Shown here piece by piece: positions 5,745 to 40,871 of a DNA stretch of 41,102 bases (position 1 is the stretch's first letter; each line of letters begins with the position of its first letter). The position numbers and the translations under genes were made by a program. The notes below the pieces were generated by a model, which made no database searches, had not been told where the DNA came from, and saw only the letters and a program-made list of their open reading frames with translations. Source of the DNA: Octopus bimaculoides (taxonomy: Eukaryota); NCBI RefSeq assembly GCF_001194135.2, contig NC_068982.1, positions 78,290,323 to 78,331,424 on the forward strand. The letters run 5' to 3'.

Positions 5745-5915
5745 ATTAACCCTGGTACTTGATGAGTGCTTTATTTTATGGACACCAGAAGGATGAAAGG
5801 CGAAGTTGACCTTAGCAGGATTTGAACTCAAAATGTTTACATTCAGATTATTTGGAGTCTGAACCAACGCTGTAAGGCATTTTTCCTGATGATGTAACAA
5901 TTCTGCCACTCCCCT
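5745..5915 (-). mobile_element. SINE family B (Meta-like central domain)
   Basis: Reverse complement contains gagttcaaatcc B box and gcctttcatccttctgg...ataaaataaagcac. Confidence 0.7.
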
Positions 5916-7495: not shown

Positions 7496-7662
7496 GGTGG
7501 CAAATTTGCACAATGGTTAGCATGGGATAAAAACAGTGATGTTCATTTAATATTTCTTCTAATTCTCTGCACTTGAGTTCAAATCCTGCCATGGTCAGCT
7601 TTGCTTTTTATCCTTTTGGATTTAATAAAAACACATAACATGCTGGAGCAGTTGATTGCACC
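7496..7662 (+). mobile_element. SINE family B, degenerate
   Basis: gagttcaaatcctgccatggtcagctttgctttttatccttttggatttaataaaa matches 26694-26906. Confidence 0.6.
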
Positions 7663-9412: not shown

Positions 9413-10372
9413 ATGCTTGACCCTCGTGACAAGTTAATCCTCAACAGTCTGATCTCTTTGATCGGACTGGTGGGATTTATTGGCAACTTTCTCATCTTAC
9501 GGAGTCTCATAGTCTACAAAAACATGAGGATTGCACATCATGTTGTGATCGGAGGTTTAGCTCTTGCCAGCATCCTTTACATCCTCTTTGAGATTCCTCA
9601 GACAATTGTGAACTTCACAAGCACTCGTTGGAACATCACAGATATTTGGTGCAACATAACTAACTACATGGCACACTGCAGCCTCATTGTGGTTGCGTTT
9701 CATCTTGTTGTACTGTCTATTTTAAATGCCCTCATCCTCACTAACCGTCCTAATATGATTATTTCAGGCAAACATGCCTTGATAATTGTCGTCATTTTGT
9801 TTGTGGTCATTTTTACTGCTGGAGTACCGTTTGCATTTGCCTACCATGTGAATAAAGATTTGGAGCGATGTACTTTTAAACCAGACTTAAATGATGAATT
9901 CCTGCTACTCATCATCATAACTGTTTGTTATTTCTTACCCTTTGGTCTAGTTCTTATCACCCATATCATCCTCCATTACATAACACAGCGTTTCTTTGTC
10001 GATAGTATACCCGAAGACAAGCGCAAACTCTCCCAGTTAGTTTTAGGTCTTGTCATTGCTTATTTTTTCTGTCAGTTACCCTACCATGTTGTAAATATTC
10101 ACTTGCTTTATATGTTAAAAGATCCAAACATCCAGGCTGAGCAATTTATAATGTGGAATCGAATTTCTTCCTACTTGTTGTGTCTTGCTCAACTTAGTTT
10201 TTCCATTAGTCCCATCGTCTGTGCAAAACTTTCCAAAGATTTTGGCGATAGCTTCGACGAGATCATCAACTGCACAGCATGTGTCTCATCAGGGAACCAA
10301 AGACAAGGAACTCTCAATGCGTCCACTCCATTAACCTGCTCAACTTTAATTGGTTCTGAGAATAATGTATGA
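9413..10372 (+). CDS. Single-coding-exon class A (rhodopsin-like) 7TM GPCR, peptide-receptor-like (galanin/allatostatin-type scaffold), atypical motifs
   Basis: Intact 319-aa ORF in otherwise non-coding DNA. Seven hydrophobic segments; GN in TM1, P in TM2, WxxxxxWC ECL1/TM3 Cys, ECL2 Cys, YFLP in TM5, CxLP in TM6, P in TM7, helix-8-like SKDFGDSF, C-terminal Cys pair. In-frame TGA 27 nt upstream of the ATG. Confidence 0.93.
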   Translation: MLDPRDKLILNSLISLIGLVGFIGNFLILRSLIVYKNMRIAHHVVIGGLALASILYILFEIPQTIVNFTSTRWNITDIWCNITNYMAHCSLIVVAFHLVVLSILNALILTNRPNMIISGKHALIIVVILFVVIFTAGVPFAFAYHVNKDLERCTFKPDLNDEFLLLIIITVCYFLPFGLVLITHIILHYITQRFFVDSIPEDKRKLSQLVLGLVIAYFFCQLPYHVVNIHLLYMLKDPNIQAEQFIMWNRISSYLLCLAQLSFSISPIVCAKLSKDFGDSFDEIINCTACVSSGNQRQGTLNASTPLTCSTLIGSENNV

Positions 10373-13398: not shown

Positions 13399-13558
13399 GC
13401 TGAAATGCTTAAGCAGTATTTCGTTTGTCTTTATATTCTGAGTTCAAATTCTGCCGGGGTCAATTTTGCCTTTCATCCTTTCGGGGTCAATAAATTAAGT
13501 ATCAGTTGCATACTACCCCTCCCCAAAAATTTCGGGCCTTGTGCTTAGATTAGAAAAG
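13399..13558 (+). mobile_element. SINE family B
   Basis: gagttcaaattctgccggggtcaattttgcctttcatcctttcggggtcaataaattaagta. Confidence 0.8.
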
Positions 13559-21312: not shown

Positions 21313-22035
21313 GTTTTATTTCTCAGAGTGCTCGGTCTTGTTTGCTCTTGTTGATTCTGTAAGCGCGGACAGCAACCTGTTGTCAGAGGTCTCACATGGT
21401 CTCTTTCTGCGCATTATAATGTTTGATAATTGCTTGTTAATTATTGGTGAAAACATTCAACACCCAAGTACTAGTCTCAAAATCCTAGCTGTCCCCAACA
21501 GTGCAGTTTTTTGGGCTTGCTCTGTTCTCATATCAATTCTAATTTCTCTGACATGTTTCTCAAACTTGGTTGTTAGTCTCCGAGTGCCCCAACAACTACT
21601 GGGAAACAGACACTCTCCTCATAGCCCACATTCTTGCAATTTCATCTTTTAGTAGTCTATACTTTTCCATCTTTTCTAGTTCTTTGTCACCTATGAATGC
21701 ATCCCCAGATATTGCAATATCTATAACCTTGGTTTCCTTTTTTACCTTTATCTACCACAATGATGTCTGGTCTCTGAGCATAGATTAGGGAGTCACATTG
21801 AATTGTAAAATCCTACAGTATCTTATATTCATTGTTTTTGGTGACTCCTTCTGGTTCATGTTTGTACCATTTCCATGCTCTGTCCAGGACATACTTTTCA
21901 CATAGTCTCCAGTGCACAAACTTAGCCACATTATCATGTCTCCTTTTGTGGTGCTTTTGGGCCAACTTGCTACACTTGCTCACAATATGTGAGATTGTTA
22001 TGTTTTTGTTGCCACACATCCTACAAAGAGGCGAT
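21313..22035 (-). mobile_element. R4/Dong-like RLE LINE, 5'-truncated (copy 1)
   Basis: Minus strand encodes CRMCG..TISHIVSKCSKLAQ..KRRHDNVAKFVHW..KIL*DF..RPDIIV..IDIAI..KELEKMEKY (CCHC knuckle plus PD-D/ExK endonuclease). (AAT)n on the sense strand at both ends. Confidence 0.9.
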
Positions 22036-22048
22036 ATTATTATTATCA

Positions 22049-22081
<33 letters not shown>

Positions 22082-23162: not shown

Positions 23163-23175
23163 AAGGAAGAAGAAG

Positions 23176-23207
<32 letters not shown>

Positions 23208-23223
23208 GTAGCAGTAGTAGTAA

Positions 23224-23269
<46 letters not shown>

Positions 23270-23300: not shown

Positions 23301-24675
23301 AATAGTCAAGAAAGAAGGCGAGAAGAAGGAAGGCGTAAAGTCTTCCTCACTACATGGAAATTGGAGTAGCACGAAGAACAACATTGAAAGCAACTGTTGC
23401 TACGAAGAGTCTAACAAAAAGGGAGTTAGCGGTGGGAAAGAGACTTTTGCAAATATCACTGCAGCTGAGGAATTGGTTAACATGTCATTGGAGAGCAAAA
23501 TAGAAAAACTAAACAAGACAGCAAAATATATGAAAATGAATGGAAGGGGGTCAGAATTGACGCCTCCAAGCGACGTGCTTGAAGCAACAGCGAAGCGGAC
23601 AGTTGTTTACAGGTGCGTGAAAACAAAGACAAGGAATCTTGAAAACGTTAAATACGATCAGATGGAAAGAGCTTTGAAAGACATATGGCAGGATATCCAC
23701 CACATTGCGAGAGCGATGCAGTACGGCGGAGTAGATGTCCTTTTAAGACCGAGGGGCAGGCGATACAGAGCTCAGTGACCACGCGTCGCACCGAAGAAAT
23801 CGCCTTCTTCCCATCGTACATGGGAAGAAGGCCAGTACGGATTGCAGTACCAGCTGTTTCACCAGACCTGGATTTATGGTGGATTCTCGTCTGTATTCGT
23901 ACGGACGGAGGAGAGAATCTCCTGAATATTAAAAGATCGAAATGGGAGAATTGAGATGGGACTATCTTGGAGGTTCTTCTCTACGTGAAACCAAAGCAGT
24001 TAGAGAAAGTCCCAGACTTGATTTCTCACTCGAACGTGATGAACGTGGAGATCAGAAGGCCGAGGTGCCACGATTGTGGTTCAAAGAGCCACTTTCGCTT
24101 TTTCTACCCACAGAACCAGAAGAGAAGCGCAAAAAGAAATGTCCAAACGAAAGTACCACAACCCATGAGTCGACAAAATCAAGAAGAAGAAGAACAACAA
24201 CAACAACAGAGAGGCAGGGGAATAGAAACAGAAATTGAACCCAAGGAGACAAAACAGGCAGTGGAGACAAAAAGGTGGCAGTGGAAGTAGCACAAGCAGT
24301 AATGGCGGAAGCTACAGTAGCAGGAGCAACAACAACAACAACTACAAGAGAACCAGAACAAATAACACCAGAAGAAAACATACAAGACACGGACTCCTCC
24401 ACGCATCAAAGTGATGATGAAGGGGAAGCCCAAAAGGCAAAAAGAAAAAAAAAACATGAAAGAGACACAGAAAAAGGGAGAAGTCCAAGAAACGGCAAAC
24501 ACAGATACATTAATGACAACACCAACACTACAAGCATCACGCTCACCAACACCATCACAAACACCCACAACAGAATGAAAAACACAATAAACTTTAAAAA
24601 GAAAAATGTTACTACAACAACAACAACAACAACAACCATCGGCGCAGCAGCGGGATTTCGTGCTAGTGAGACAAG

Positions 24676-26317
24676 GTGGATCATCACTATCTGGTGTCTG
24701 TCCTAAAAGCTGTCGGTTTCGGTCCCGTCTTCAGAGGCTGGATCACTACAATATATAGTGACATCTGCTCGGTTGTCAAATTAAATGGTCACCCCTCGGA
24801 ACTTTTCAGTATTGAAGATTCGGTACTCCAAGGATACTCCCTGTTTTTATATATTTTAACTTTAGAACCCTTGCTGCGAAGGATGGAGAATTGGAGGGGT
24901 ATCCCGTTGGAACTAAGTCACAGGAGAGCTGTGTCTGCATACGCGGACGGCGTCACTGTCATGGTGTCGGACTCTTCGCACATAGAAAAGATTGACACCA
25001 TACTGGAAGAATATCAGGAATGCACAGGAGCACTCATAAACCAAGACAAGTCAGTAGATCTAAAACTAGGCTCTTGGAGAGGCAAGTCGACTAGCAGCGA
25101 TTTCTGTCGCTGGACGGAGGATCCGGTGAAAGTGTTAGGAGTCTGGTTCGGACCAGATCTCCTGGCAGATAAGAACTGGGAAGAGGTTATGACTAGGGTG
25201 GCCAAGCTCACCCAGAAATGGGCAGAAAGGAAGCTGTCTCTGAAAGGACGGATGGAAGTAGTGAATGCATATATCGCCTTAGTAGTGCACTACTGCCTAG
25301 CCGTCGTGCCTTATCCTAAGAAAACTCTGACCAGATTGGAATGCTTGTTTTTCGTATAGAAGGGTCAGGTTCCGCTGATCAGAAAATCCATCTGCAGTTA
25401 ACACCCACACCGTGGTGGTCTTGGGATGCCTTCCTTAATGATGTGGCGCCACGCTATGAGGCTGTCGCACCTACAGAATTATTTAAATCACTGCGATGAT
25501 GTGGACGACGACGACGACGAAAATAAGAGTGAACTGGTGTGGGCGTCTTTCATGCGACACGTCTTTTCGCAGCTCATCTCATTGACAGAACTGCAGTCAT
25601 GTGTCAAACGTAGACCCAGGTTGGGTGTTTGGCATCTAGAATGTTGTCAGATGCTCACTGTATTGTACCAACTGCACAAAACCGATAGTGGGAAAACAAC
25701 TCGAGATTTCTATAGGGGATTAGTTGAGGATATGAGTGATGATGGTCTAGCATTGAATCTAGGCATCGACAAGAAGTTTGAGCAGTCTCTTCCAGAGGAC
25801 CTTCGGTTCAAAGATCATGGACAATTTCCAAAAGTCTTTGGCTCGGCGGTGTTACAGAAGGGCATTGTCCATCTGAGACAAGCTCTTCAAGCATGGAAGT
25901 GCCAACAGCCGAACCTGCTCGAGATACTTGCAGAGGGACGAAACTATCTTGCATACAATGATTCCATGTCCGTGCATTAGAGAGTTGTGAGATTGTGTGG
26001 AGCAGCTGTTGTCGCGTGTAAGATGAATTCAGCTGTCTGCTGAGTACATTGTGAAGATCGACGCACCACCTTCCATTAGCAGAGAAAGAAGGCAGGTCTT
26101 TTTCTGCTTAGTGGCTGTGGCAAAAGAGGCTGGGTGGTGGACCCGTCTGAAAGGTTTGAAGACAGGCACATTCCTATCTGGTCAAGCCCTCATCAATTTC
26201 TTCAAGTATCATTTGAAGAGGAAGGTGAGGATAGAGAGAGAGGTGTCGCCTTCTAGTGTGTTTATCAAAGGTAGTCGACAGTGGCAAGACTGGCGAGACT
26301 GTATGGATCTATTCTGA
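24676..26317 (+). pseudogene. L1/Tx1 ORF2 remnant (RT domains 3-7 and C-terminus), frameshifted
   Basis: ORFs 24676-25359, 25426-25980 and 26051-26317 in changing frames. Confidence 0.85.
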
Positions 26318-26623
26318 ATATGTTTTTCTAAGCAGGAGGAAAGAAACTAGAAGAGGGCACTTTCTCATGCGTTGAACATGGAAGAGTAAGCCAAGTTTTT
26401 TGTGAAGGGTTTACCCCAGATTACCCTAAATGGACTGCCCCGCTATTAGGGATTCTATTATTTATTTATTTCTCTACCTTCTATTACATATCTTCTGTTA
26501 TAGCTTTTAATTTGGTAGTATCTCCCCTTAATTGATGTTAACTCTACATGCTTTTGTGCTGTAACTCATCCTTCGATATTGTCCTCCATGTTTTGGGCCC
26601 CTGTGGCCAATAAAAGAAATCAG

Positions 26624-26692
<69 letters not shown>

Positions 26693-26693
26693 C

Positions 26694-26906
26694 AAGATGG
26701 TGAGCTGGCAGAATCATTAGCATGCCAGGCAAAATGCTTAGTGGCATTTCATCCCTCATTACGTTTTGAGTTCAAATTCTGCCGAGGTCAACTTTGCCTT
26801 TCATCCTTCGGGGTCAATAAAATGAGTACTAGACAAATACTGGGGTCGTTGTGATCGACTTTACCCCTTCCCCCAAATTTCAGGACTTGTGCCTTTAGTA
26901 GAAAGG
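26694..26906 (+). mobile_element. SINE family B, full length, in (ATT)n
   Basis: gatggtgagctggcagaatc A box, gagttcaaattc B box, gcctttcatccttcggggtcaataaaatgagtac domain, ATT tail. Confidence 0.9.
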
Positions 26907-26952
26907 ATTATTATTATTATTATTATTATTACTACTACTACTATTATTATTA

Positions 26953-27010
<58 letters not shown>

Positions 27011-27018
27011 AAGCACTT

Positions 27019-27232
27019 AAGATGGTGAGCTGGCAGAATCGTTAGATCGCCGGGCAAAATGCTTAGCGGTATTTCATGTCTTTACTTCTGAGTTCAAATT
27101 CCGCCGAGGTCGACTTTGTCATTCATCTTTTCGGGGTCGATAAATTAAGTACCAGTGAAACACTGGGTTCACGTAATCGACTAGCTCCGTCTCCCCGCCC
27201 CAAATTTCAGGCCATGTGCTTTAGTAAAAAGG
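27019..27232 (+). mobile_element. SINE family B, full length, tandem to the previous copy
   Basis: Same structure with independent substitutions; separated from the first copy by ~110 nt of (ATT)n. Confidence 0.9.
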
Positions 27233-27253
27233 ATCATTATTACTACTGTTAAT

Positions 27254-27806
27254 GAGTGAGAGAGCAGTGCATGCCATCAAAGTGACACTAGGTTAAAATA
27301 TACGAAGCCCAGTATACCCATCATGACTACCCATCTGATACGGGTACACCAGGCACATACATCACAACCATATGTGCGCGGCATGATGATCTCGTATCAA
27401 TATAATCAACGCATGACCTTGCAGATGGGGCCCAGTTAGAATTTTCTTCAGGTTGAGTAGCCCATCCCGCTCAAAAGGCCCATGAATAAGGTTTGTTTAA
27501 GGATGTTGAACAAAACACCCATGTTTCCAAAGGTGAATTATTCAAACCCTAAAGAATTCCTCTCAACACATGACTATGATGCTTCTCCACTACTTCTGCT
27601 TGTGATCAGGAATGCCCATATTGTCAGCCACCAAGGGACCTGCTCAACTAGCTATGGTCAAACAACTGACAAGCAAATCTGTGGTATTGAGCAGAATGTT
27701 TGCTGTAGCCCATCTTTTATACCAAGACAAAACAATGTACATGATAACATTTGCAATCAGTAAAGATCAAAATCCATGAGAGCCACTATCTGGTACTACA
27801 TCAGAG

Positions 27807-27808
<2 letters not shown>
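27254..27808 (-). mobile_element. ~555-bp non-coding element (family C), copy 1
   Basis: End-to-end match to 30748-31302, 32728-33281 and 37551-38121; ATT tracts on both sides. Confidence 0.9.
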
Positions 27809-27840
<32 letters not shown>

Positions 27841-27852
27841 GATTATTATTAT

Positions 27853-28667
27853 GTTTTTTTTCTTTTCTTCTTTCTTCAAATTTTCTTCCATTTCTCGCCG
27901 AGTGTTTTCTGTACACCTAGGGCAGAGAAACTCGTTGTATGCATTCCCAGTTTACACACGCAAATTCACAGGTAAAATATGTATTAAGAAAAAAAAAAAA
28001 ATTCATGAATGGATGTTGTTTTCACAGCGATAATGCTCTTCTCAGTACATGAGTCGTTCCACTTAGCACGAATTTTTGCACTTCCTGTAGGGATGGTAAG
28101 CCTGGTATCATTTTCAAATAGGTTTCAGTACCTTTTTTTTATCATTCCTAGAGATCCTACAATCACTGGTACGGTAGTCGCCTTGAGGTGCCACATTTTT
28201 TCAATTTCTATTAGCAAGTCTTTATATTTACTGATCTTGTCAAATCCTTTCGCCGCTATATNNNNNNNNNNNNNNNNNNNNNNNNNNNNNNNNNNNNNNN
28301 NNNNNNNNNNNNNNNNNNNNNNNNNNNNNNNNNNNNNNNNNNNNNNNNNNNNNNNNNNNNNNNNNNNNNNNNNNNNNNNNNNNNNNNNNNNNNNNNNNNN
28401 NNNNNNNNNNNNNNNNNNNNNNNNNNNNNNNNNNNNNNNNNNNNNNNNNNNNNNNNNNNNNNNNNNNNNNNNNNNNNNNNNNNNNNNNNNNNNNNNNNNN
28501 NNNNNNNNNNNNNNNNNNNNNNNNNNNNNNNNNNNNNNNNNNNNNNNNNNNNNNNNNNNNNNNNNNNNNGCTTCAGGATGGTGTTTATACCATTTGTCAG
28601 CGGTTTTGATTTTATAATGCTGACATATTGTCCAGTGTAAATACTGGCCAACTCTGTCATGTCTTGC

Positions 28668-28670
<3 letters not shown>
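27853..28670 (-). mobile_element. R4/Dong-like LINE 3' fragment (copy 2), interrupted by gap
   Basis: KARHDRVGQYLHWTICQHYKIKTADKWYKHHPE, gap, then DKISKYKDLLIEIEKMWHLKATTVPVIVGSLG..GTTHVLRR. (AAT)n at both ends. Confidence 0.9.
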
Positions 28671-28723
<53 letters not shown>

Positions 28724-28724
<1 letters not shown>

Positions 28725-29640
28725 GACGTCGCATAGTATACAATATCGTGAGGTTGTTGATTGAAGATATTTTGTCTACCGGGGGTTTGTACTGTTTGTC
28801 AAGTCACAACAAGGACCTTAGGCAGACAGTACTTTACGCAATATGCATGCAGTTCCAAGTAATACCGATTTTTGCAATGCATCTAGATTGTAGAGTATCT
28901 CTAAAGTTTTCAAATGTTTTTTCAGATTGGGTGGTATTGAACCCAATGTTGCGATGACAATAGGGATAAACTTTATGTTTAACTCTCGTAGCTTCCACAT
29001 CTTAGCGATCTCAATTCTTAGGTCTCCATGTTTATCAACCTTTTCTTTCTTTCATGATGATATGTTGATCTCCTGGCGCTGCCACATCAATTATTAGATA
29101 CACTTGTTTGTCCCTCCTGAAGGTTGCTATACCTAGCCTTCGGTGCTCTAATACCTTGTCTGTCTGGAAATCAAAGTCCCAGAGGATTTTTGCCTTCCCC
29201 TTTTCGTCCGTAACCTCATATCCATACTTACGCCATAGTAGCCAGTGGAAGTTTTGGGCTACCTCGTAGTGTCTACGCTTGTACTATTTCTGCGCAAGAC
29301 TTTCACATGCACTAACAATGTGAGTCACGCTTTCGACCCTCTTCCCACACATCCTGCAGAGGTCCGTTGCACTTGTGTGGTATATATTTGTAACGGTTGG
29401 TGCAAAACCGTTGTTCCACCACGGGAAAAGATCTGACGCAGTGTTAATTCAAATTTGGGTATAGTGGATCGAATCCACTTCACGCCTGCAAGATTCCTAT
29501 ATATTCTTTGTTACTGAGCTGATATTCAATGCTTGGTTCTGGGCAGCGATGATTAGGCTTTCAGTATTCTTTTTTAGGTCACCCTTGTTAAGCCATCGCC
29601 ATGATGCATCCTGGTCTTTTAATTTGTTGGTTTCAGCAAT
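28724..29640 (-). mobile_element. R4/Dong-like LINE 3' fragment (copy 3)
   Basis: SWRWLNKGDLKKNTESLIIAAQ..CRMCGKRVESVTHIVSAC..KAKILWDFDFQTD..QKSVLLGTACILRKVLSA*, 3'UTR and (AAT)n tail. Confidence 0.92.
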
Positions 29641-29740
29641 TTTATTGATCTCCGAAGGATGAAAGGCAAAATTGACCTCGGCAGAATTTGAACTCAGAAC
29701 GTAATGAGGGATGAAATACCACTAAGCATTTTGTCTGACA
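29639..29740 (-). mobile_element. SINE family B internal fragment fused to the 5' end of R4 copy 3
   Basis: Minus strand aaatgcttagtggtatttc..gagttcaaattctgccgaggtcaattttgcctttcatccttcggagatcaataaaat runs straight into LINE coding sequence. Confidence 0.8.
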
Positions 29741-29741
29741 T

Positions 29742-29990
29742 TGTTAACACGCTGATCAAAATGCTTAGCAGCATTTTGTTCATCCTCACATCCTGAGTTA
29801 AAATTCTACCGAGGGTGACTTTGCCTTTCATCTTTTTGTGGTCGATAAAGTAAGTACCAGTTGAGTACTGGCGTTGATTTGATCGACTCACTCTCTCCTC
29901 TGAAATTGCTAGCCCTGGGGCCTTGTACTCAAATATGAAACCATTATTATTGTAAAGGTGGCGAGCTGGCACACCATTAGTGCATTAGCT
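29742..29990 (+). mobile_element. SINE family B (5'-truncated) followed by the head of another copy
   Basis: Full domain and ATT tail to ~29950, then ggtggcgagctggcacaccattag. Confidence 0.8.
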
Positions 29991-30635
29991 CAATTCTGCT
30001 ATCTGTATAGNNNNNNNNNNNNNNNNNNNNNNNNNNNNNNNNNNNNNNNNNNNNNNNNNNNNNNNNNNNNNNNNNNNNNNNNNNNNNNNNNNNNNNNNNN
30101 NNNNNNNNNNNNNNNNNNNNNNNNNNNNNNNNNNNNNNNNNNNNNNNNNNNNNNNNNNNNNNNNNNNNNNNNNNNNNNNNNNNNNNNNNNNNNNNNNNNN
30201 NNNNNNNNNNNNNNNNNNNNNNNNNNNNNNNNNNNNNNNNNNNNNNNNNNNNNNNNNNNNNNNNNNNNNNNNNNNNNNNNNNNNNNNNNNNNNNNNNNNN
30301 NNNNNNNNNNNNNNNNNNNNNNNNNNNNNNNNNNNNNNNNNNNNNNNNNNNNNNNNNNNNNNNNNNNNNNNNNNNNNNNNNNNNNNNNNNNNNNNNNNNN
30401 NNNNNNNNNNNTTCACAAATTTAGACATTTGTTTGTTATTCCAGCCACTGTTTTTACAGCTGGATTTTCCTTCTGTTACAAACCACTCAATCATAAAAAT
30501 GGCAAGGGTGTGTGATGGAGGGAGGAGTTGGGGTTGAACCTGTTATCAAGTGAGGCAAATTCATTTGAGTAGGGAACTAAAGCTTTTCATAAAATTCAAT
30601 AATAATAATAACAACAACAACAACAACAACAATAC

Positions 30636-30683
<48 letters not shown>

Positions 30684-30700
30684 TAATAATAATAATAATG

Positions 30701-30744
<44 letters not shown>

Positions 30745-30747
30745 CAA

Positions 30748-31302
30748 TACCCTGATACAGTACCAGGTAGTGACTGTCGTGGTTTCTGATCTTAATTGAT
30801 TGGAAGTGTTATCATGTACATTGTTTTGTTTTGGTATAAAAGATGAGCTACAGAAAATATTCTGCTCATTACCACGGATTTGCTCGTCAGTTGTTTGATC
30901 TTAACCAGTTGAGTATGTCCCTTGGTGGCTGACGACATGTGCATCTCTGAACATGAGCAGAAGTAGTGGTGGAGCATCATAGCCATGTGTTGAGAGGAAT
31001 TCTTTGGGGTTTGGATAATTCACCTTTGGAAACATGGCTGTTTCATTCAACATCCTTAAACAACCCTTATTCAGGAACCTTTTGAGTTGGTTGGGCTACT
31101 CAACCTGAATAAAATTCTAGCTGAGCCCTACCTGCTACGTTATGCGCTGTTTATCTTGATATGAGATCACCATATAATGCACATATGGTTATGATGAATG
31201 TGCCTGGTGTACCCTTATCAGACGGGTAGTCATGATGGGTATACTGGGCTTCGTATATTTTACTCCAGTGTCACTTTGATGGCATGCACTGCTCTTTCAT
31301 TC
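30748..31302 (+). mobile_element. ~555-bp family C element, copy 2
   Basis: Between long (AAT)n arrays 30598-30744 and 31303-31365. Confidence 0.92.
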
Positions 31303-31365
<63 letters not shown>

Positions 31366-31366
<1 letters not shown>

Positions 31367-32318
31367 GACGTACAAGCACAGAAAATGCTAAGCGTATGAA
31401 AACCCGTACTAAAAATGGCAAATACCCAAGGAGAGCTAATAATGCCGATATTGACAAAGCCTTTACCAATCAATAGTTAGTGTCTTCTGGCTTAAAATCA
31501 GAAACAGAAGGGTTTATCATAGCAGCCTAAGATCAATGCCTACCTACAAGGAGCTACCAGGCCAACATATTAAAGAACGACAGTAGCCCAACATGTCGTG
31601 TATGTAAACAACAAAGTGAAACCATGTCTCCATGTGCAGTCTTCTTGTGCTTATAGAGTATCTCAACATGCATGATAGAGTAGCACAGTGTATTGACTGG
31701 GTAATTTACAAACAACCTGAACCTGCCCCATGATAAAAGCTGGTAGGAACACAAACCACCGCCAGTTCTTGAAAATGATCACATCTCACTCCTCTGGAAA
31801 GATCGATGCGAATAGGTCAGACATTATATTGAAGGACTTCAGACAAAAATCATACCTCCTCATTGATATGACTGTCCCAATCAATATAAAATGTATCTGT
31901 CAAGACCTACCAAAAACTGAGCCAGTATAAAGATCTTGAAATAGAAATTGGCAAAATGTGGAACCTCAAAACTAAAACAATACCTGTTGCCATAGATGCC
32001 CTAGGAATGATAGCAAAAGGAGCTGATTCCTACATAGCTCAGATACCAGGAATCCCCAAAATGGCAGAAATTCAAGAGATAGTGCTCATGGGAACTCTCC
32101 ATATCCTACGTAAAATGCTGTCTATGTAATTTCAAATTTTAAAACAAACTTATAATTTTCTTATGTTTTCTTAAACTTCTCTAGAACAATACTATGTGCA
32201 AAACCAAATATATGGCAGTCTAGGTATGACACCTACTTGAACTTTTAACTTGTCTCTTGAGGTCTCTGGGTGAGACTTGGAGTCAACTTGTACAACTACA
32301 AAGCAAAAGTCAAACATA
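31366..32318 (+). mobile_element. R4/Dong-like LINE 3' fragment (copy 4)
   Basis: SGLKSETEGFIIAA*DQCLPTRSYQANI..CRVCK..RSDIILKD..IDMTVP..YKDLEIEIGKMW..MGTLHILRKMLSM*, 3'UTR, AAT tail. Confidence 0.9.
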
Positions 32319-32333
32319 TAATAATAATAATAG

Positions 32334-32648
32334 TCAAAGTCCCAGAGGACTTTTGCCTTCCAGCGCTAAGATGTGGCAGCTACGAGAGTCGAACATAAAG
32401 GTTATCCCTATTGTCATCGGAGTATTGGGTTCAATACTACCCAATCTGAAAAAAACATCTGAAAACCTTAGAAATGCCCTACAATCTAGATGAATTGCAA
32501 AAGTTGGCATTGCTTGGAACTGCACGCATATTGCGTAAAGTACTGTCTGCCTGAGATCCTTGCTGTGACTCGACAAACAGTACAAACCCCCAGTAGATAT
32601 AATATCTTCAATCAACAACCTCACGATATTGTATACTGGGCGACGTCT
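32334..32648 (+). mobile_element. R4/Dong-like LINE 3' end (copy 5, same subfamily as copy 3) with 28-bp 5' inversion
   Basis: AKMWQLRESNIKVIPIVIGVLG..LLGTARILRKVLSA* and a 3'UTR matching copy 3; 32334-32361 is antisense LINE sequence. Confidence 0.9.
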
Positions 32649-32664
32649 ATACTACTACTACTAC

Positions 32665-32727
<63 letters not shown>

Positions 32728-32729
<2 letters not shown>

Positions 32730-33281
32730 GCCTTGATGCACTACCAGGCAGTGGCTCTCATGGCTTCTGATCTTAATTGATTGGAAGTGTTGTCATGTAC
32801 ATATTTTGTTTTGGTATAAAAGATGGGCTACAGAAAATATTCTGCTCAATACCACAGATTTGCTTGTCACTTGTTTGACCTTAACCAGTTGAGCATGTCC
32901 CTTGGTGGCTGACGATATGTGCATCTCTGATCACGAGCATAAGTAGTAGGGGAGCATCATAGTCATGTGTTGAGAGGAATTCTTTGGGGTTTGAATAATT
33001 CACCTTTGGAAACATGGGTGTTTCGCTCACATCCTTAAACAAACCTTATTCAGGAACCTTTTGAGCGGGATGGGCTACTCGACCTGAAGAAAATTCTAGC
33101 TGGGCCCCACCTGCGAGGTCATGCGCTTTTTATTTTGATATGAGATCACCATGTTGCGCACATATTGTTGTGATGCTTGTGCCTGGTGTACCCTTATCAG
33201 ACGGGTAGTCATGATGGGTATAATGGGCTTCGTATATTTTACCCCAGTGTCACTTTGGTGGTATGCACCGCTCTCTCACTC
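32728..33281 (+). mobile_element. ~555-bp family C element, copy 3
   Basis: (AAT)n on both sides. Confidence 0.92.
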
Positions 33282-34385
<1,104 letters not shown>

Positions 34386-34410
34386 ATAATAATAATAATA
34401 ATAATAATAA

Positions 34411-34467
<57 letters not shown>

Positions 34468-34475
34468 CAGCAGTA

Positions 34476-34695
34476 GATGGAACAAATAGGGGCTGCGATA
34501 AAGAGTACATAGAACAAATAGGGGCTGCAATAAGGGTGGAGCACTTGCAGAAAGCAGCACTGCTTGGAACCGCTCGAATACTCCGGAAGGTGCTCGAAAA
34601 ATAAGGGGTGTTGCCTTAGTTCTCTGGTAGTGAACGGCTGACACTGTCGTACATCTCCAGTGTTAGAAGCTGTGCGAAGACAATAAAATGATAAT
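34476..34695 (+). mobile_element. R4/Dong-like LINE extreme 3' end (copy 7) with 5' duplication
   Basis: EQIGAAIRVEHLQKAALLGTARILRKVLEK*; gaacaaataggggctgc repeated at 34480 and 34512. Confidence 0.85.
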
Positions 34696-34702
34696 TATTA
34701 TT

Positions 34703-35456
34703 ATTTCTTTATTAACCACAAAGGTTTATAGTAAGAAAAACATTATGGACAGTACAGGACAAAACAAAGCATGTGCTTGTATATGTGAGTGTGTGTTGTG
34801 AGGGTTTTGCGTGTAAACAAGAATAACAAAATTTTTAAAAATCAACAATGTGTGATCCTCAATCGTGAGGAGACGTTCGGAGGTTGCTCAAGGAAAAAAA
34901 ACATGGGTACCCTGACTTTTGGGGCACAAAAAGCGGAAGAGTATACGCTCCAGCGTAATCAGACGGTGGTCAGGACAAGGCACGACGGTCAAGCGATAGT
35001 AGACGACGGACGCGATATACGCGTTAGCCACCTTTGCCCGGCTCATTTCTGGGTGAGAGTAATTACTCTGCTCGTTATCTCATCCCAGTTCTTGTTCATC
35101 TGGAGGTCCGGACCAAACCAGGCATCGAGCAATTTAACCGATCCGTCCGTCTAGCGCCCAACGACGCAGTTGAACGGCATGGACTTACTTCTCCAAGTGC
35201 CGAGCCGCAAGCCCACTGATTTTTCCTGGTTAATTGTCACCTCTGAAACCGCCTCGTAGTCCCTAAGAGCGGTGCCGATCATTTCTATGTGTTTATGATC
35301 CGACATCACTAAAGGTGACACCGTCGGCATATGCCAACACGCATCTCCCACATCCTAGGTCACGTAGGATGCCTCTCAACGCCTCCACTTTGTGTATTAG
35401 TGGATCGAGAGTCAGTACGTACAAGAGAGACGAGAGGAGGCAACCATGCCGGATCG
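34703..35456 (-). mobile_element. L1/Tx1-clade LINE, 5'-truncated and internally deleted (copy B)
   Basis: LYVLTLDP..AYADGVT..INQEKSVGLRLGTW..WFGPDL..VANAYI..TLERILF, then 3'UTR ending gtggttAATAAAagaaat like copy A. Confidence 0.85.
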
Positions 35457-35466
35457 TAATAATAAT

Positions 35467-35683
35467 AGTTTCAAATTCTGGAATAAAGCCAACAATTTTT
35501 TGGGAAGAGATAATATGATTACATAGAGTCCAGTACTTGATTGGTACCTTATTTTATCAACCCATAAACTCTGAAAAGATGAAAAGTTAAACTGAGAGGT
35601 TTGAACTCAGAATGCAAAGGGTCAAAAGAAATAGGCTAAGCATTTTCTTTGCTGTGCTGGTAACTCTGTCAGTTCACTGCCTT
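35467..35683 (-). mobile_element. SINE family B
   Basis: Minus strand: aaggcagtgaactgacagag..aaatgcttagcc..gagttcaaacc..gataaaataaggtacc; sense-strand ATT flanks. Confidence 0.75.
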
Positions 35684-35703
35684 AATAATAATAATAATAA
35701 TAA

Positions 35704-36618
35704 TGGCAAGAAAAGCCCCTACATGGTAAATACTGGGCTAAACTAAATGCGAAAGAAATAGACAGAGAAAAATCCCAGCAATGGCTGAGAAGCTCAGGAC
35801 TCAAAGCAGAGACTGAAGGATTTTTAATTGCTGCACAAGACCAAAGCCTCCCCACCAGAAATTACCAAAAACACATAATGAAAAGAAATATAACAAGTAA
35901 CTGTAGAATATGTGGAGATCGACAAGAAACAATAAATCATATTATCTCTGGCTGCCCAGTCCTGGCTAAGAAGGAATATATCCACAGACACGACAGAGCT
36001 GGGACCTATATACACTGGAAGCTATGCCAACNNNNNNNNNNNNNNNNNNNNNNNNNNNNNNNNNNNNNNNNNNNNNNNNNNNNNNNNNNNNNNNNNNNNN
36101 NNNNNNNNNNNNNNNNNNNNNNNNNNNNNNNNNNNNNNNNNNNNNNNNNNNNNNNNNNNNNNNNNNNNNNNNNNNNNNNNNNNNNNNNNNNNNNNNNNNN
36201 NNNNNNNNNNNNNNNNNNNNNNNNNNNNNNNNNNNNNNNNNNNNNNNNNNNNNNNNNNNNNNNNNNNNNNNNNNNNNNNNNNNNNNNNNNNNNNNNNNNN
36301 NNNNNNNNNNNNNNNNNNNNNNNNNNNNNNNNNNNNNNNNNNNNNNNNNNNNNNNNNNNNNNNNNNNNNNNNCTATCATAGTAGGTGCCTTAGGTATAAT
36401 AAAAAAATATTCAGACAAATACATAACAAAAATAACAGGACTTACAAATATATATAACATACAGAAAATTGCACTACTGGGTACTGCACACATCCTACGC
36501 AAAACACTTTCAATACAGTAAACATAAGAGCACCACAGCAAACCACAGCACATACCCAAGGCGCACAGAGCTGCGCTCGGTAGTGAAGTGAAAGCACGTT
36601 ATAAAAATAAAACTACTG
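35704..36618 (+). mobile_element. R4/Dong-like LINE 3' fragment (copy 8), apparently young
   Basis: Stop-free WQEKPLHGKY..WLRSSGLKAETEGFLIAAQDQSLPTRNY..CRICGDRQETINHIISGC..RHDRAGTYIHWKLCQ, gap, IIVGALG..QKIALLGTAHILRKTLSIQ*. (AAT)n at both ends. Confidence 0.93.
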
Positions 36619-36689
36619 AATAATAATAATAATAATTTTGGGGTTGGAAACTGTGAAAAGTAGGTGTAAGGAGGAGGTAAAATTCGGTG

Positions 36690-37165
36690 CGACCACAATC
36701 TATGGAGAGTGACTGAATTGGAGACTTGCAAATTCCTGTGGGATTTCCCAATTCAAACAGACCAGATGCTTCAGCACAACAAAGACAAAGTAAACCACAT
36801 GTGCTTATAATTGATGTTGCATGCCCATTTGACCCATGGACAGTTAAGAAGGAAGATGAGAAAGTAGACCTACACAATCCTCTGAAATAGTCCAACTATG
36901 GAAGATGAGAAAGGTGAAGATACTGCCAATCATTGCTAGGGCCTTGGGGACAGTATCAAAAGATAATGGGAGGAACATAAAGAAAATAAGAGTAGGGTTT
37001 CCAGTAGAACTGTTACAAAACTGTGCCTCCTTGGCACAGCCTGAATCAACCGGAAAGCATTAGATAGTTGAAGAGAACAAATAGCATAGTACCATTGGTA
37101 GCACTCAAGTCATGCAAGATTGTAGGAGTTTCTGCAAAACCTGAGTTAAAAAATAAATAAATATC
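36690..37165 (+). mobile_element. R4/Dong-like LINE 3' fragment (copy 9), old
   Basis: KFLWDFPIQTD..IIDVACPFD..KKEDEK..LWKMRKVKILPIIARALG..CLLGTA*INRKAL with indels. Confidence 0.8.
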
Positions 37166-37191
37166 ATCATCATCATCACCACCACCACCAC

Positions 37192-37249
<58 letters not shown>

Positions 37250-37423
37250 GACTGAGAGAGCAGTGCATGCCATCAAAGTGAGACTGAGGTACAACTATAC
37301 GAAGCCTAGTATATCCATTACGACTACCTGTCAGATAAGGATACATTTTCTCCCTCAGTCACAGCTTCAGGATGGTGTTTATACCATTTGTCAGCGGTTT
37401 TGATTTTATAATGCCGACATATT
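37250..37423 (-). mobile_element. Chimeric insertion: R4 LINE internal segment + 3' end of family C
   Basis: 37346-37423 encodes ICRHYKIKTADKWYKHHPEAVTEGEN (59/60 nt identical to 28570-28629 over the comparable part); 37250-37345 is the last ~95 nt of family C. Confidence 0.88.
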
Positions 37424-37432
37424 ATTATTATT

Positions 37433-37526
<94 letters not shown>

Positions 37527-37550
37527 GTTGTTGTTGTTGTTGTTATTATT
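37421..37550. repeat. (ATT)n(AAT)n(ATT)n polarity-switching array
   Basis: ATT to 37435, AAT 37436-37470, ATT/GTT to 37550. Confidence 0.95.
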
Positions 37551-38121
37551 GAGTGAGAGAGCAATGCATGCCATCAAAGTGGCACTGAGGTAACATATAC
37601 GAAGCCCAGTATACCTATCATGACTACCCGTCTGATAAGGATACACCAAGCACATGCATCACAACCATATGTGCGCGACATGGTGACCTCATGTCAAGAT
37701 AAACAGCGCATGACCTTGCAGGTGGGGCCCAATTAGAATTTTCTTCAGGTCAAGTAGCCCATCCAGCTCAAAAGGTTCCTGAATAAGGGTTGTTTAAGGA
37801 TGTTGAACGAAACACCCATGTTTCCAAAGGTGAATTATCCAAACCCCAAAGAATTCCTCTCAATACATGGCTATGATGCTCCTCTACTACTTCTGCTCGT
37901 GATCAGAGATGCACATGTCGTTAGCCACCAAGGGACATGCTCAACTGTTTAAGGTGAAACAACTAACGAGCAAATCTGTGGTATTGAGCAGAATATTTGC
38001 TGTAGCCCATCTTTTATACCAAAACAAAACAAAACAAAACAAAACAATGTATACGATAACACTTCCAGTCAGTTAAAATCAAAATCCATGAGAGCCACTG
38101 CCTGGTACTGCATCAGGGCAT
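37551..38121 (-). mobile_element. ~555-bp family C element, copy 4
   Basis: Full-length match, with an internal (AAAAC)n expansion at ~38021-38045. Confidence 0.92.
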
Positions 38122-38239
38122 TCATTTTGTTTATCATATACAAGTATGTGAGTATTCATCGCTATTTTTTTTATTTTATTCAATTTCAGAAAAATTGAAG
38201 CATGTTATTGACAATAATATTATCATTATTTCTCTAAAA

Positions 38240-40019: not shown

Positions 40020-40871
40020 TACGAGGAGGTACCTAAAAGTGACCAGAAACGTTCTCTGTGGGACAAGCCCGTTGTAGTTCAGGCTTCCGCCACTAGAAGC
40101 CACTTGATGCGACCTTCAGTCATCAATCTGCCGACCGACGTCGTCAGGTGAAGTCGTACTGCCACGTGGTGCACTTTTGTTTTGCAGTGCTTCTCCCCTC
40201 TTCGTCGATTTTTGCGATGGCTGAAACGAAGGAACTGTGTGCTTCTATGAAATTCTGTTTTCTGCTGGGGAAAATGGCGGCCGAAACAGTTATACTTCAA
40301 ACAGCTTACAAGGACGCTGCCATAAGCAAAACACAAGTTTGCGAGTGTTTTTCACGCTTGAAGACCAACCTCGTTCAGGGCAACCGTCGACTTCTCGAAC
40401 GAATGAAAACATAATGAAAATTCAGGAACTGATCTTGGAGGACTGTCACTGAACAATTGACGAACTTGTTGATATGATTGGTGTATTCTGGAACTCCTGT
40501 CAACGAATCTTGAGCGAGGAATAGTGAATGAAAAGAGTTGCGGCGAAATTTATGCCTCGCTTCGAAAACGGTCACGACTGAATGTGTGTCGTGAATTGAA
40601 AGAACAATTTGAAGTTGATCACTGGTGATGAAAGCTGGTGCTTCAAAATTTCCAGATGTGAGAGAGGTGAAGAAAAAAAAAATGACAGAGGGATTAAAAG
40701 ACATCACTGCACAAGAGTTCCAGCACTGCTTCGAACAGCGGAAAACGCCTCTGGACCAAAGCGTTGCTTCAAATGGAGAATACTTTGAAGGTGATAAAAG
40801 TATAAACATGTAAAACTAAGTAGATAAAATAACATTGCAAAATTCCGGTTTCTTTTGGGTACCGCTTCGTA
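40020..40871 (+). mobile_element. Mariner DNA transposon, internally deleted, non-autonomous
   Basis: 27-bp TIRs at 40022-40048 and 40843-40869 (21/27 match) with TA flanks. Transposase remnants KFCFLLGK..EDQPRSGQPST..MKRVAAKFMPR..ITGDESWCF joined to FPDV..CFEQ..SNGEYFEGD. Confidence 0.92.

What the first reader, a model, noticed from the sequence alone, without database searches (positions are those of the whole stretch)
37250..37423. Template-switch chimera joining the 555-bp element 3' end to R4 LINE coding sequence
Seen: on the minus strand, (AAT)n is followed by ~78 nt of R4 ORF (ICRHYKIKTADKWYKHHPEAVTEGEN; 37364-37423 is 59/60 identical to R4 copy 2 at 28570-28629), then by the terminal ~95 nt of family C and (AAT)n. 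Both parts are co-oriented and meet at ...gagaaaa-tgtatc-cttatc, with no microsatellite between them. Known: RLE-type RTs such as R2 jump between RNA templates during TPRT. Inference: one RT event began on family C RNA and switched to R4 mRNA. That would link family C to this particular R4 subfamily and is the most direct evidence here for the partnership.
Basis: partly seen in the sequence, partly recalled or inferred. Interest (0 to 1): 0.85.

Follow-up and report, generated by a model that had tools for sequence, protein, structure and literature searches.

The report
Fused LINE–SINE-like retroposon fragment in octopus
In a cluster of jumping-gene copies in the Octopus bimaculoides genome, 78 bases of a Dong/R4 LINE gene are joined directly to the last 96 bases of a 555-bp non-coding repeat. 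The join is real in the assembly, but nothing available here shows whether one reverse-transcription event or a later deletion made it, so it is an ordinary, unresolved curiosity.

Summary
On the minus strand, (AAT)n is followed by 78 nt of Dong/R4 ORF (37423-37346), which is 59/60 identical to copy 2 at 28629-28570. Next come the terminal 96 nt of family C (37345-37250) and (AAT)19, with no microsatellite at the join. The parts meet at TGTA.

The window is O. bimaculoides chromosome CM046602.1, a gapped short-read assembly. It holds a nest of at least 15 elements, all inserted into (TAA)n, as Dong elements do.

The template-switch reading is possible but not favoured:
- The two halves look unequal in age. 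R4 differs at 1/60 positions from copy 2; the C part differs at 12/97 from the C consensus (p=0.018).
- The R4 piece is internal, about 0.5 kb from its 3' end. Acceptors in known chimeras are usually copied from their 3' end.
- The arrangement a deletion would need (R4, then (AAT)n, then C, on one strand) lies 9 kb away.
- Co-orientation is forced by the strand-specific target.

My ranking: separate insertions plus a deletion of about 1 kb 0.38; template switch 0.28; insertion-associated deletion 0.12; gap-closing artefact 0.12.

Shared (TAA)n targeting is better evidence for the C–Dong partnership than this locus.

The parts
37193..37249 (-). (AAT)19 tail and target microsatellite 3' of the composite fragment. 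It reads (ATT)19 on the + strand.
   Evidence: TRF; regex; sequence
37250..37345 (-). The terminal 96 nt of family C, the 555-bp non-autonomous (TAA)n-targeting element. It is 12/97 different from the consensus of the four full-length copies.
37333..37345 (-). Junction zone. TGTA (37345-37342) is shared by family C and the inferred R4 codons AAT GTA. Microhomology could run to about 37333, because relatives read V-S/T-I/L at this point.
   Evidence: The copy-2 subfamily sequence at this point lies in the N gap 28262-28569.
37346..37423 (-). A 78-nt internal ORF fragment of a Dong/R4-type RLE LINE. It encodes ICRHYKIKTADKWYKHHPEAVTEGEN, between the CCHC finger and the PD..D..K nuclease core. 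The first AAT (37423-37421) is shared with the upstream microsatellite.
37424..37551 (-). Compound microsatellite between the full-length C copy and the composite fragment. On the + strand it reads (ATT)5, (TAA)12, (TTA)18, (TTG)6, (TTA)n, so it contains a block of inverted polarity.
37552..38123 (-). Full-length family C copy immediately 5' of the composite fragment on the minus strand. It shares 2-3 variants with the composite's C part.
27853..28668 (-). R4 copy 2, a 5'-truncated element interrupted by the N gap 28262-28569 and lying between (TAA)n 28669-28723 and (AAT)n 27810-27852. Family C 27809-27249 follows it on the same strand. This is the arrangement from which a deletion would produce the composite.

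Best explanation
The fragment is a dead composite left by two separate retrotranspositions into one strand-specific (TAA)n tract. First came an older family C copy. Later a young, 5'-truncated Dong/R4 copy of the copy-2 subfamily, about 600 nt long, inserted into the (AAT)n just upstream of it. A DNA-level deletion of about 1.0 kb followed. It joined the R4 ORF to position ~460 of family C at a short microhomology (TGTA, possibly longer). It removed about 0.5 kb of R4 3' sequence, the intervening (AAT)n and the first ~460 nt of C.

Shown: the composite structure, the (TAA)n targeting of both families, the unequal divergence of the two halves, and an intact example of the precursor arrangement nearby.

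Inferred: the order of events and the deletion itself.
For: - The window holds at least 15 elements, each followed on its own strand by (TAA)n or (AAT)n and arranged in co-oriented arrays. Adjacency and co-orientation therefore come for free.
- The exact precursor (R4 copy 2, (AAT)n, full-length C, all on the minus strand) lies at 28668-27249.
- Age discordance. The R4 part differs from copy 2 at 1/60 positions, and that difference is a CpG change on the copy 2 side. The C part differs from the C consensus at 12/97, against 3-6/96 for the full copies. Fisher p=0.018, or 0.004 if R4 is counted as 0/60. Two inner-stem pairs of the C hairpin are broken in the composite, as expected of an old copy.
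- Copy 2 is nearly open-reading, with no stops and one frameshift in an A8 run. That fits a young subfamily.
- The R4 piece is internal, about 0.5 kb from the element's 3' end by the R4-D ruler. Arbitrary deletion endpoints give this naturally.
- All four other C copies are full length, so a full-length C precursor is the norm.
- Small internal deletions are visible in other R4 copies here.
Against: - It needs three events where a template switch needs one.
- No deletion of 100 bp or more is seen in the other ~8 kb of nested elements, and the deletion would have to be as young as the R4 insertion.
- The age argument rests on only 60 comparable R4 bases and a consensus of four C copies. One of the C part's differences is a compensatory pair (C-G to U-A) and 2-3 are shared with the neighbouring C copy. 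Some of the 12 differences may therefore mark a subfamily rather than decay.
- No undeleted allele or orthologue was seen.
Confidence: 0.38

Rival explanations
1. One target-primed reverse transcription started on a family C RNA at an (AAT)n nick and copied 96 nt. It switched at UGUA to an internal site of a Dong/R4 mRNA and copied 78 nt. It was then joined to the upstream (AAT)n through an AAU/AAT microhomology.
For: - The order is right: LINE piece 5', C 3' end plus tail 3'. The parts are co-oriented and fused directly with no microsatellite.
- Microhomology is at least 3-4 nt (chance 0.05 for 3 or more, 0.016 for 4 or more).
- The 5' end of the R4 piece coincides with an AAT.
- It is the only C copy of five that is not full length, as a premature switch would give.
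- RLE-type RTs such as R2 jump templates efficiently in vitro (own knowledge: Bibillo & Eickbush 2002, 2004).
- LINE-made chimeras are documented for L1 and MGL (PMC13174262, PMC4476161, PMC2104539).
- One compensatory pair in the C hairpin hints that the C template belonged to a functional variant.
Against: - The halves differ in apparent age. That would require a C template already about 10% diverged, for example a passively transcribed old copy, and this would undercut the partnership inference.
- The acceptor was entered internally, about 0.5 kb from its 3' end. Known chimeras (U6/L1, Alu/L1) mostly copy the acceptor from its 3' end and full length (PMC13174262). R2 jumps are end-to-end (own knowledge).
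- The donor exit point is inside, not at the end of, a 20-bp hairpin arm.
- There is only a single example. A TSD test is impossible in a microsatellite target.
- Family C shares no sequence with the copy-2 3' UTR.
Confidence: 0.28
2. Insertion-associated target deletion. A 5'-truncated R4 copy was already resident. A family C retrotransposition primed on that copy's own (AAT)n tail, stopped after 96 nt, and its cDNA end was joined by microhomology to a break about 0.5 kb upstream inside R4. The R4 3' part was deleted in the process.
For: - The tails of resident elements are the preferred targets in this nest.
- Microhomology at a 5'-truncated junction is typical.
- L1 insertion-mediated deletions of kilobase size are well documented (own knowledge: Gilbert 2002; Symer 2002; Han 2005).
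- The product is identical in sequence to that of the template-switch model.
Against: - It requires R4 to be older than the C part, the opposite of the observed divergence.
- The four other C copies are full length, so short truncated C insertions are not the norm here.
Confidence: 0.12
3. Assembly or gap-closing artefact. The true locus holds more sequence, for example the rest of R4, (AAT)n and the C 5' part. Two partial walks were merged at a short spurious overlap, or the 174-bp piece is misplaced between microsatellites.
For: - The assembly is short-read based, with 10 N gaps in 41 kb. The window is identical to GCA_001194135.2.
- The copy-2 contig ends exactly 51 nt after its only difference from the composite. 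This suggests k-mer contigs that break inside this repeat, so the composite's R4 stretch must have been bridged by a later step.
- The possible overlap at the join could be up to ~12 nt.
- The fragment is bounded by 57-bp and 131-bp microsatellites, one with an odd polarity inversion.
Against: - An overlap of 4-12 nt is far below normal k-mer or overlap thresholds.
- Chimeric reads do not normally assemble.
- The whole 174-bp unit would fit within single reads.
- Gap-size estimates would normally veto closing a ~1 kb gap to zero.
Confidence: 0.12
4. Endonuclease-independent capture. A short piece of R4 cDNA or mRNA was patched into a double-strand break at the 5' edge of an old, truncated family C remnant. 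It was primed internally at UGUA.
For: - A LINE fragment truncated at both its 3' and 5' ends, joined by microhomology, is the hallmark of endonuclease-independent L1 insertions (own knowledge: Morrish 2002; Sen 2007).
- It explains an old C part next to a young R4 part.
Against: - This is a rare class even for L1 and has not been described for RLE LINEs.
- Nothing in the window specifically calls for it.
Confidence: 0.05

Closest known systems
Dong (R4 clade) (TAA)n-specific non-LTR retrotransposons: Dong of Bombyx mori, DongAg, and DongBg of the snail Biomphalaria. Dong-R4 families are annotated in Octopus.
   Same: - The LINE fragments here carry the C-terminal CCHC plus RLE nuclease region (profile match to R2 proteins, E 9e-6).
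- Each ends in (TAA)n inside a (TAA)n tract, the Dong target (PMC3812793). Relatives in other organisms also end in (TAA)n.
- Dong-R4 is abundant in Octopus, with recently active families in O. vulgaris (PMC13282606). A full-length Dong consensus exists for O. bimaculoides (PMC9115989).
   Different: - Only 5'-truncated C-terminal pieces are in the window, so no RT-based phylogeny was done.
- At least seven subfamilies with unrelated 3' UTRs coexist here.
L1 chimeric retrocopies (U6/L1, U3/L1, 5S/L1, Alu/L1)
   Same: Two unrelated RNAs are fused head to tail in one orientation, with the tail of the first template at the 3' end. A template switch or RNA ligation is invoked (PMC13174262, PMC4476161).
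   Different: - In those chimeras the LINE is the first template (3' part), and the acceptor is mostly full length and copied from its 3' end.
- They are validated by a single TSD pair, by contemporaneous arrival in multi-species alignments, and by matched subfamily ages (PMC13174262).
- Here the LINE is the second template and was entered internally, a TSD cannot be read, and the ages look mismatched.
MGL-LINE bipartite and tripartite chimeric pseudogenes of Magnaporthe grisea
   Same: Evidence outside mammals that a LINE RT can concatenate different transcripts during one reverse transcription (PMC2104539).
   Different: That rests on many loci with recurrent partners. This is a single locus.
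R2 reverse transcriptase template jumping
   Same: It concerns the same RLE-type enzyme group as Dong/R4. Jumps use 0-few nt of microhomology (own knowledge: Bibillo & Eickbush 2002, 2004; PMC8857657 and PMC8594491 for related RTs).
   Different: The documented jumps run from the 5' end of the donor to the 3' end of the acceptor. Here both breakpoints are internal.
Post-insertion or insertion-mediated deletions between adjacent transposable elements
   Same: Arbitrary internal endpoints, short microhomology, and loss of the intervening spacer (own knowledge: Gilbert 2002; Symer 2002; Han 2005 for L1).
   Different: No undeleted allele has been seen here.

Membership tests
Dong/R4-clade RLE LINE (parent of the 78-nt piece) | C-terminal CCHC zinc knuckle followed by a restriction-like endonuclease core (RHD/N ... 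K/RPD-x12-14-D ... K) | tested here: met
   R4-D reads C-x2-C-x8-H-x4-C, RHD and RPD...D. A profile of 24 relatives matches the C-terminal region of solved R2 proteins, E 9e-6. The 78-nt piece aligns between the CCHC finger and the PD motif.
Dong/R4-clade RLE LINE (parent of the 78-nt piece) | Orientation-specific insertion into (TAA)n microsatellites, as Dong does | tested here: met
   Every LINE fragment in 26.6-38.1 kb is followed by (TAA)n or (AAT)n on its own strand. Relatives L003, L004 and L006 show the same. The Dong target is given in PMC3812793.
Dong/R4-clade RLE LINE (parent of the 78-nt piece) | RT-domain phylogeny placing it in the R4 clade rather than R2, NeSL, CRE or Hero | not tested
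   No RT domain of these copies lies in the window, and all database hits retrieved were C-terminal fragments.
Template-switch chimeric retrocopy | Two unrelated transcripts fused directly and co-oriented, with the 3' part carrying the priming tail | tested here: met
Template-switch chimeric retrocopy | One pair of target-site duplications bounding the whole composite | not testable with these tools
   The target is a microsatellite, so no TSD can be read.
Template-switch chimeric retrocopy | Both parts arrived together (orthologous empty site, or presence and absence always together) | not testable with these tools
   No other Octopus genome or reads could be reached.
Template-switch chimeric retrocopy | The two parts have matching ages or subfamily activity periods | tested here: inconclusive
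   1/60 against 12/97 differences, p=0.018, leans against. The samples are small and the C subfamily structure is unknown. One compensatory pair was seen.
Template-switch chimeric retrocopy | Acceptor RNA copied from its 3' end, usually full length, as in U6/L1 and Alu/L1 | tested here: not met
   The R4 piece is an internal ORF segment about 0.5 kb upstream of the element's 3' end.
Template-switch chimeric retrocopy | Recurrence elsewhere in the genome with independent breakpoints | not testable with these tools
   There is only one such join in the 41-kb window. A search with the junction-spanning ORF found nothing, which is uninformative.
Non-autonomous partner of a Dong-type LINE (family C) | Same target and tail as the LINE | tested here: met
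   All five C 3' ends are followed by (AAT)n on their own strand, and the copies sit in the same arrays as the LINEs.
Non-autonomous partner of a Dong-type LINE (family C) | 3' region shared with the partner LINE's 3' UTR | tested here: not met
   No similarity better than E=0.16 to any of the seven or more R4 3' UTRs in the window, copy 2 included. A partner outside the window is not excluded.
Non-autonomous partner of a Dong-type LINE (family C) | Small-RNA-derived head (tRNA, 5S or 7SL), which would make it a SINE in the strict sense | tested here: not met
   No tRNA was found by ARAGORN. No Rfam family matched at E<=1 apart from two noise hits in microsatellites.

The most novel reading that the evidence does not exclude
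The fragment is a true in vivo RNA-to-RNA template switch by a Dong/R4 restriction-like-endonuclease LINE reverse transcriptase. It would run from a trans-mobilised family C RNA, inside its 3' hairpin, to an internal site of the enzyme's own mRNA. That would be a natural record of internal, microhomology-guided switching by this enzyme class, and of family C being serviced by the young copy-2 Dong subfamily.
Probability: 0.28. Interest if true: 0.4.

Novelty: new member of a known kind. Interest (0 to 1): 0.2.

Why it matters
If a single RT event made it, the locus would be a rare natural footprint of template switching by an R4-clade enzyme. It would also give a physical link between a high-copy octopus non-autonomous element and its LINE partner. 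That bears on how octopus SINE-like families, about 12% of the genome, are amplified.

As it stands the locus is one decayed 174-bp fragment whose origin cannot be told apart from an ordinary deletion, so it carries little weight. The more useful result is the context: a (TAA)n nest showing that family C and many Dong subfamilies share one strand-specific target.

Tried and rejected
- Copy-2 subfamily sequence across the gap. A 40-aa copy-2/chimera peptide found no database protein. A search with R4-D returned 749 proteins, but the best are 71-78% identical and come from metagenomes or shrimps, not the same subfamily. Their DNA (L002-L006) is about 70-77% identical and carries no family C.
- Independent copies of the join. 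The 50-aa junction-spanning ORF found nothing. This is uninformative, because octopus repeat ORFs are evidently poorly represented in that database.
- More of the genome. Look-up of window ORFs returned only the same assembly around the GPCR, 27 kb from the locus. Two metagenome scans, one for the family C 3' core and one for an R4 29-mer, were empty.
- The idea that the composite is a 5'-truncated copy sharing its start with copy 2 was rejected: the truncation points differ by 47 nt.
- The idea that the family C tail is simply an R4 3' UTR, which would make this an internally deleted R4, was rejected: no similarity to any R4 3' UTR here.
- The idea that the locus is a duplicate of the copy 2-C_27249 arrangement was rejected: the C parts are only ~76-80% identical.
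- A tRNA or ribozyme head in family C: none was detected.

Full report
**Source and context.** The window is identical over 20,372 compared bases to Octopus bimaculoides GCA_001194135.2, chromosome CM046602.1, from about 78.29 Mb, in the same orientation. It is a short-read assembly with ten N gaps in 41 kb.

**What is at the locus.** Read on the minus strand, the order is:
- a full-length family C copy (~38123-37552);
- a compound microsatellite (37551-37424);
- 78 nt of LINE ORF (37423-37346);
- 96 nt matching the 3' end of family C (37345-37250);
- (AAT)19 (37249-37193).

The LINE piece is 59/60 identical to copy 2 at 28629-28570. 118 of 120 Dong/R4-type proteins from the database align to it (best E 5e-9). 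The C piece aligns in register with the last 96-97 nt of the four full-length C copies. The two pieces abut at GAGAAAA|TGTA|TCCTTATC with no microsatellite.

**What the elements are.**
- The LINE fragments encode the region from a C-x2-C-x8-H-x4-C knuckle through RHD and RPD...D to a conserved LLGTA.ILRK C-terminus.
- A profile of 24 relatives matches the C-terminal endonuclease region of solved R2 proteins (E 9e-6). These are restriction-like-endonuclease LINEs.
- Between 26.6 and 38.1 kb at least ten such 5'-truncated fragments, of at least seven subfamilies with unrelated 3' UTRs, lie in co-oriented arrays together with five family C 3' ends. Each is followed on its own strand by (TAA)n or (AAT)n.
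- Relatives from other organisms also end in (TAA)n.
- (TAA)n is the published target of Dong elements, including one from a snail (PMC3812793).
- Dong-R4 is a major LINE group in Octopus. PMC13282606 reports 5 families and 1,129 recently active insertions in O. vulgaris. PMC9115989 found a full-length Dong consensus in O. bimaculoides but no evidence of recent activity.
- Family C has no tRNA or other known RNA head and no similarity to any R4 sequence in the window. It does share the target and the tail.

**The join in detail.** Family C homology starts at 37345 (TGTA[T/C]CC). R4 homology ends no earlier than 37343, at the conserved Val codon. Several relatives read V-S/T-I/L at this point, and the composite reads V-S-L. 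The overlap is therefore at least 3-4 nt and could be up to about 12 nt. The copy-2 subfamily sequence that would settle this lies in the N gap 28262-28569. Chance gives 3 nt or more with p=0.05 and 4 nt or more with p=0.016. The join therefore looks homology-guided, which fits both a template switch and microhomology-mediated end joining. On the C side the breakpoint sits inside the 5' arm of a 20-bp hairpin conserved in all C copies. On the R4 side it sits about 0.5 kb from the element's 3' end, using R4-D as a ruler. The 5' end of the R4 piece coincides with an AAT that merges into the microsatellite.

**Tests that bear on mechanism.**
1. Age. The R4 piece differs from copy 2 at one CpG position, and there the composite keeps the state seen in relatives. 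Copy 2 itself has no stops and one frameshift in an A8 run. This is a young subfamily. The C piece differs from the consensus of the four full copies at 12/97 positions, while those copies differ at 3-6/96. Fisher p is 0.018. Two inner hairpin pairs are broken. One event should give halves of equal age. A caveat applies: one change pair is compensatory (C-G to U-A) and 2-3 changes are shared with the adjacent C copy. Part of the excess may therefore be subfamily difference.
2. Co-orientation and adjacency carry no weight as evidence, because the target is strand-specific and the arrays are co-oriented throughout. The arrangement R4, (AAT)n, C on one strand exists intact at 28668-27249.
3. Known LINE chimeras mostly copy the acceptor from its 3' end. 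They are validated by a TSD pair, by co-arrival and by matched subfamily ages (PMC13174262). Here the acceptor is internal, a TSD cannot be read in a microsatellite, and the ages look mismatched.
4. The four other C copies are full length. This fits either a premature switch or deletion of a full-length precursor, but fits a plain short C insertion less well.

**Ranking.**

| Explanation | Probability |
|---|---|
| Sequential insertions plus a ~1.0 kb microhomology-mediated deletion | 0.38 |
| C insertion into the tail of a resident R4, with target deletion | 0.12 |
| Gap-closing or placement artefact | 0.12 |
| Break-repair capture of R4 cDNA | 0.05 |

The remaining probability is unassigned.

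On the artefact possibility: the copy-2 contig stops exactly 51 nt after its only difference from the composite. This suggests k-mer contigs that break inside this repeat, so the composite's R4 stretch was bridged by a later assembly step. An overlap of 4-12 nt is nevertheless well below normal joining thresholds.

**The partnership claim.** Even if the template switch were real, the C template would have to be an already diverged copy, and C shares nothing with the copy-2 3' UTR. The locus therefore does not tie C to that subfamily. The shared, strand-specific (TAA)n target and tail are the better evidence that a Dong-type enzyme moves family C.

**Verdict.** The feature is real in the assembly and correctly described. 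It is of a known kind, and its mechanism is unresolved with the data that could be reached. Interest is low.

Noticed in passing
window 26600-38140: A nest of (TAA)n-targeted insertions: five family C 3' ends and at least ten 5'-truncated Dong/R4 fragments of at least seven subfamilies with unrelated 3' UTRs. They form convergent co-oriented arrays: minus strand at 29.7-27.2 kb, plus strand at 30.6-37.15 kb, minus strand at 38.1-37.2 kb.
   Followed up: partly
window 37420-37551; L006 1282-1326: The microsatellite 5' of the composite changes polarity. On the + strand it reads (ATT)5, (TAA)12, (TTA)18, (TTG)6. A relative from an unrelated metagenome contig also ends in (TAA)11 directly followed by (TTA)4. 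The cause is unknown; it could be a snap-back, an opposite-strand tail-only insertion, or an assembly effect.
   Followed up: no
window 31202-31250 (same region in the copies ending at 27249, 33281, 37552): Family C carries a 20-bp hairpin about 50-100 nt from its 3' end, conserved in all copies. One C-G to U-A compensatory pair occurs in the composite. It is a candidate recognition structure for the mobilising enzyme.
   Followed up: partly
window 28570 (edge of N gap 28262-28569): The contig carrying R4 copy 2 ends exactly 51 nt after its single difference from the composite fragment (28621). This is what a k≈51 de Bruijn contig would do when k-mers stop being unique. It implies that several near-identical copies of this R4 subfamily exist in the genome. 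The gap is written as 308 N, but colinearity with R4-D predicts only ~140 nt missing.
   Followed up: no
window 9413-10372 (+): An intact intronless 319-aa ORF with a rhodopsin-family 7TM domain (Pfam 7tm_1, E 8e-19). It is the only called gene in the 21 kb retrieved from the public record.
   Followed up: partly
window 23470-26320 (+): A G+C-richer stretch (44-47%) with ORFs of a different reverse-transcriptase-bearing LINE (RVT_1, E 2.7e-5, below Pfam's cut-off). It is preceded by (GAA)n and (AGT)n at 23166-23269.
   Followed up: no
window 21463-22034 (-), next to (TAT)15 at 22035-22079: A further Dong/R4-like C-terminal fragment lies outside the main nest and again abuts a TAA-type microsatellite.
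   Followed up: no
window 40148-40452 (+): ORFs resembling the N-terminal DNA-binding part of a mariner-type transposase. This rests on recognition by eye only; no Pfam hit was obtained for the neighbouring ORF 40375-40809.
   Followed up: no
window 5773-5836, 7573-7630, 13403-13514, 26722-26860, 27055-27194, 29641-29741, 29757-29898: Another short repeat family of about 100-140 nt, 75-93% identical between copies. It includes an inverted pair at 29641-29898 and a tandem pair at 26625-27251.
   Followed up: no
L004 (GCA_024449705.1, JAANSU013411523.1) 940-1053 vs window 36522-36636: The 3' UTR of this unidentified organism's Dong-like element visibly resembles that of R4 copy 3 in the window, including the run ...CCCAAGGCGCACAGAGCTGCGCTCGGT.... 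Its protein is 77-79% identical. This subfamily is therefore shared with another, probably related, species.
   Followed up: no
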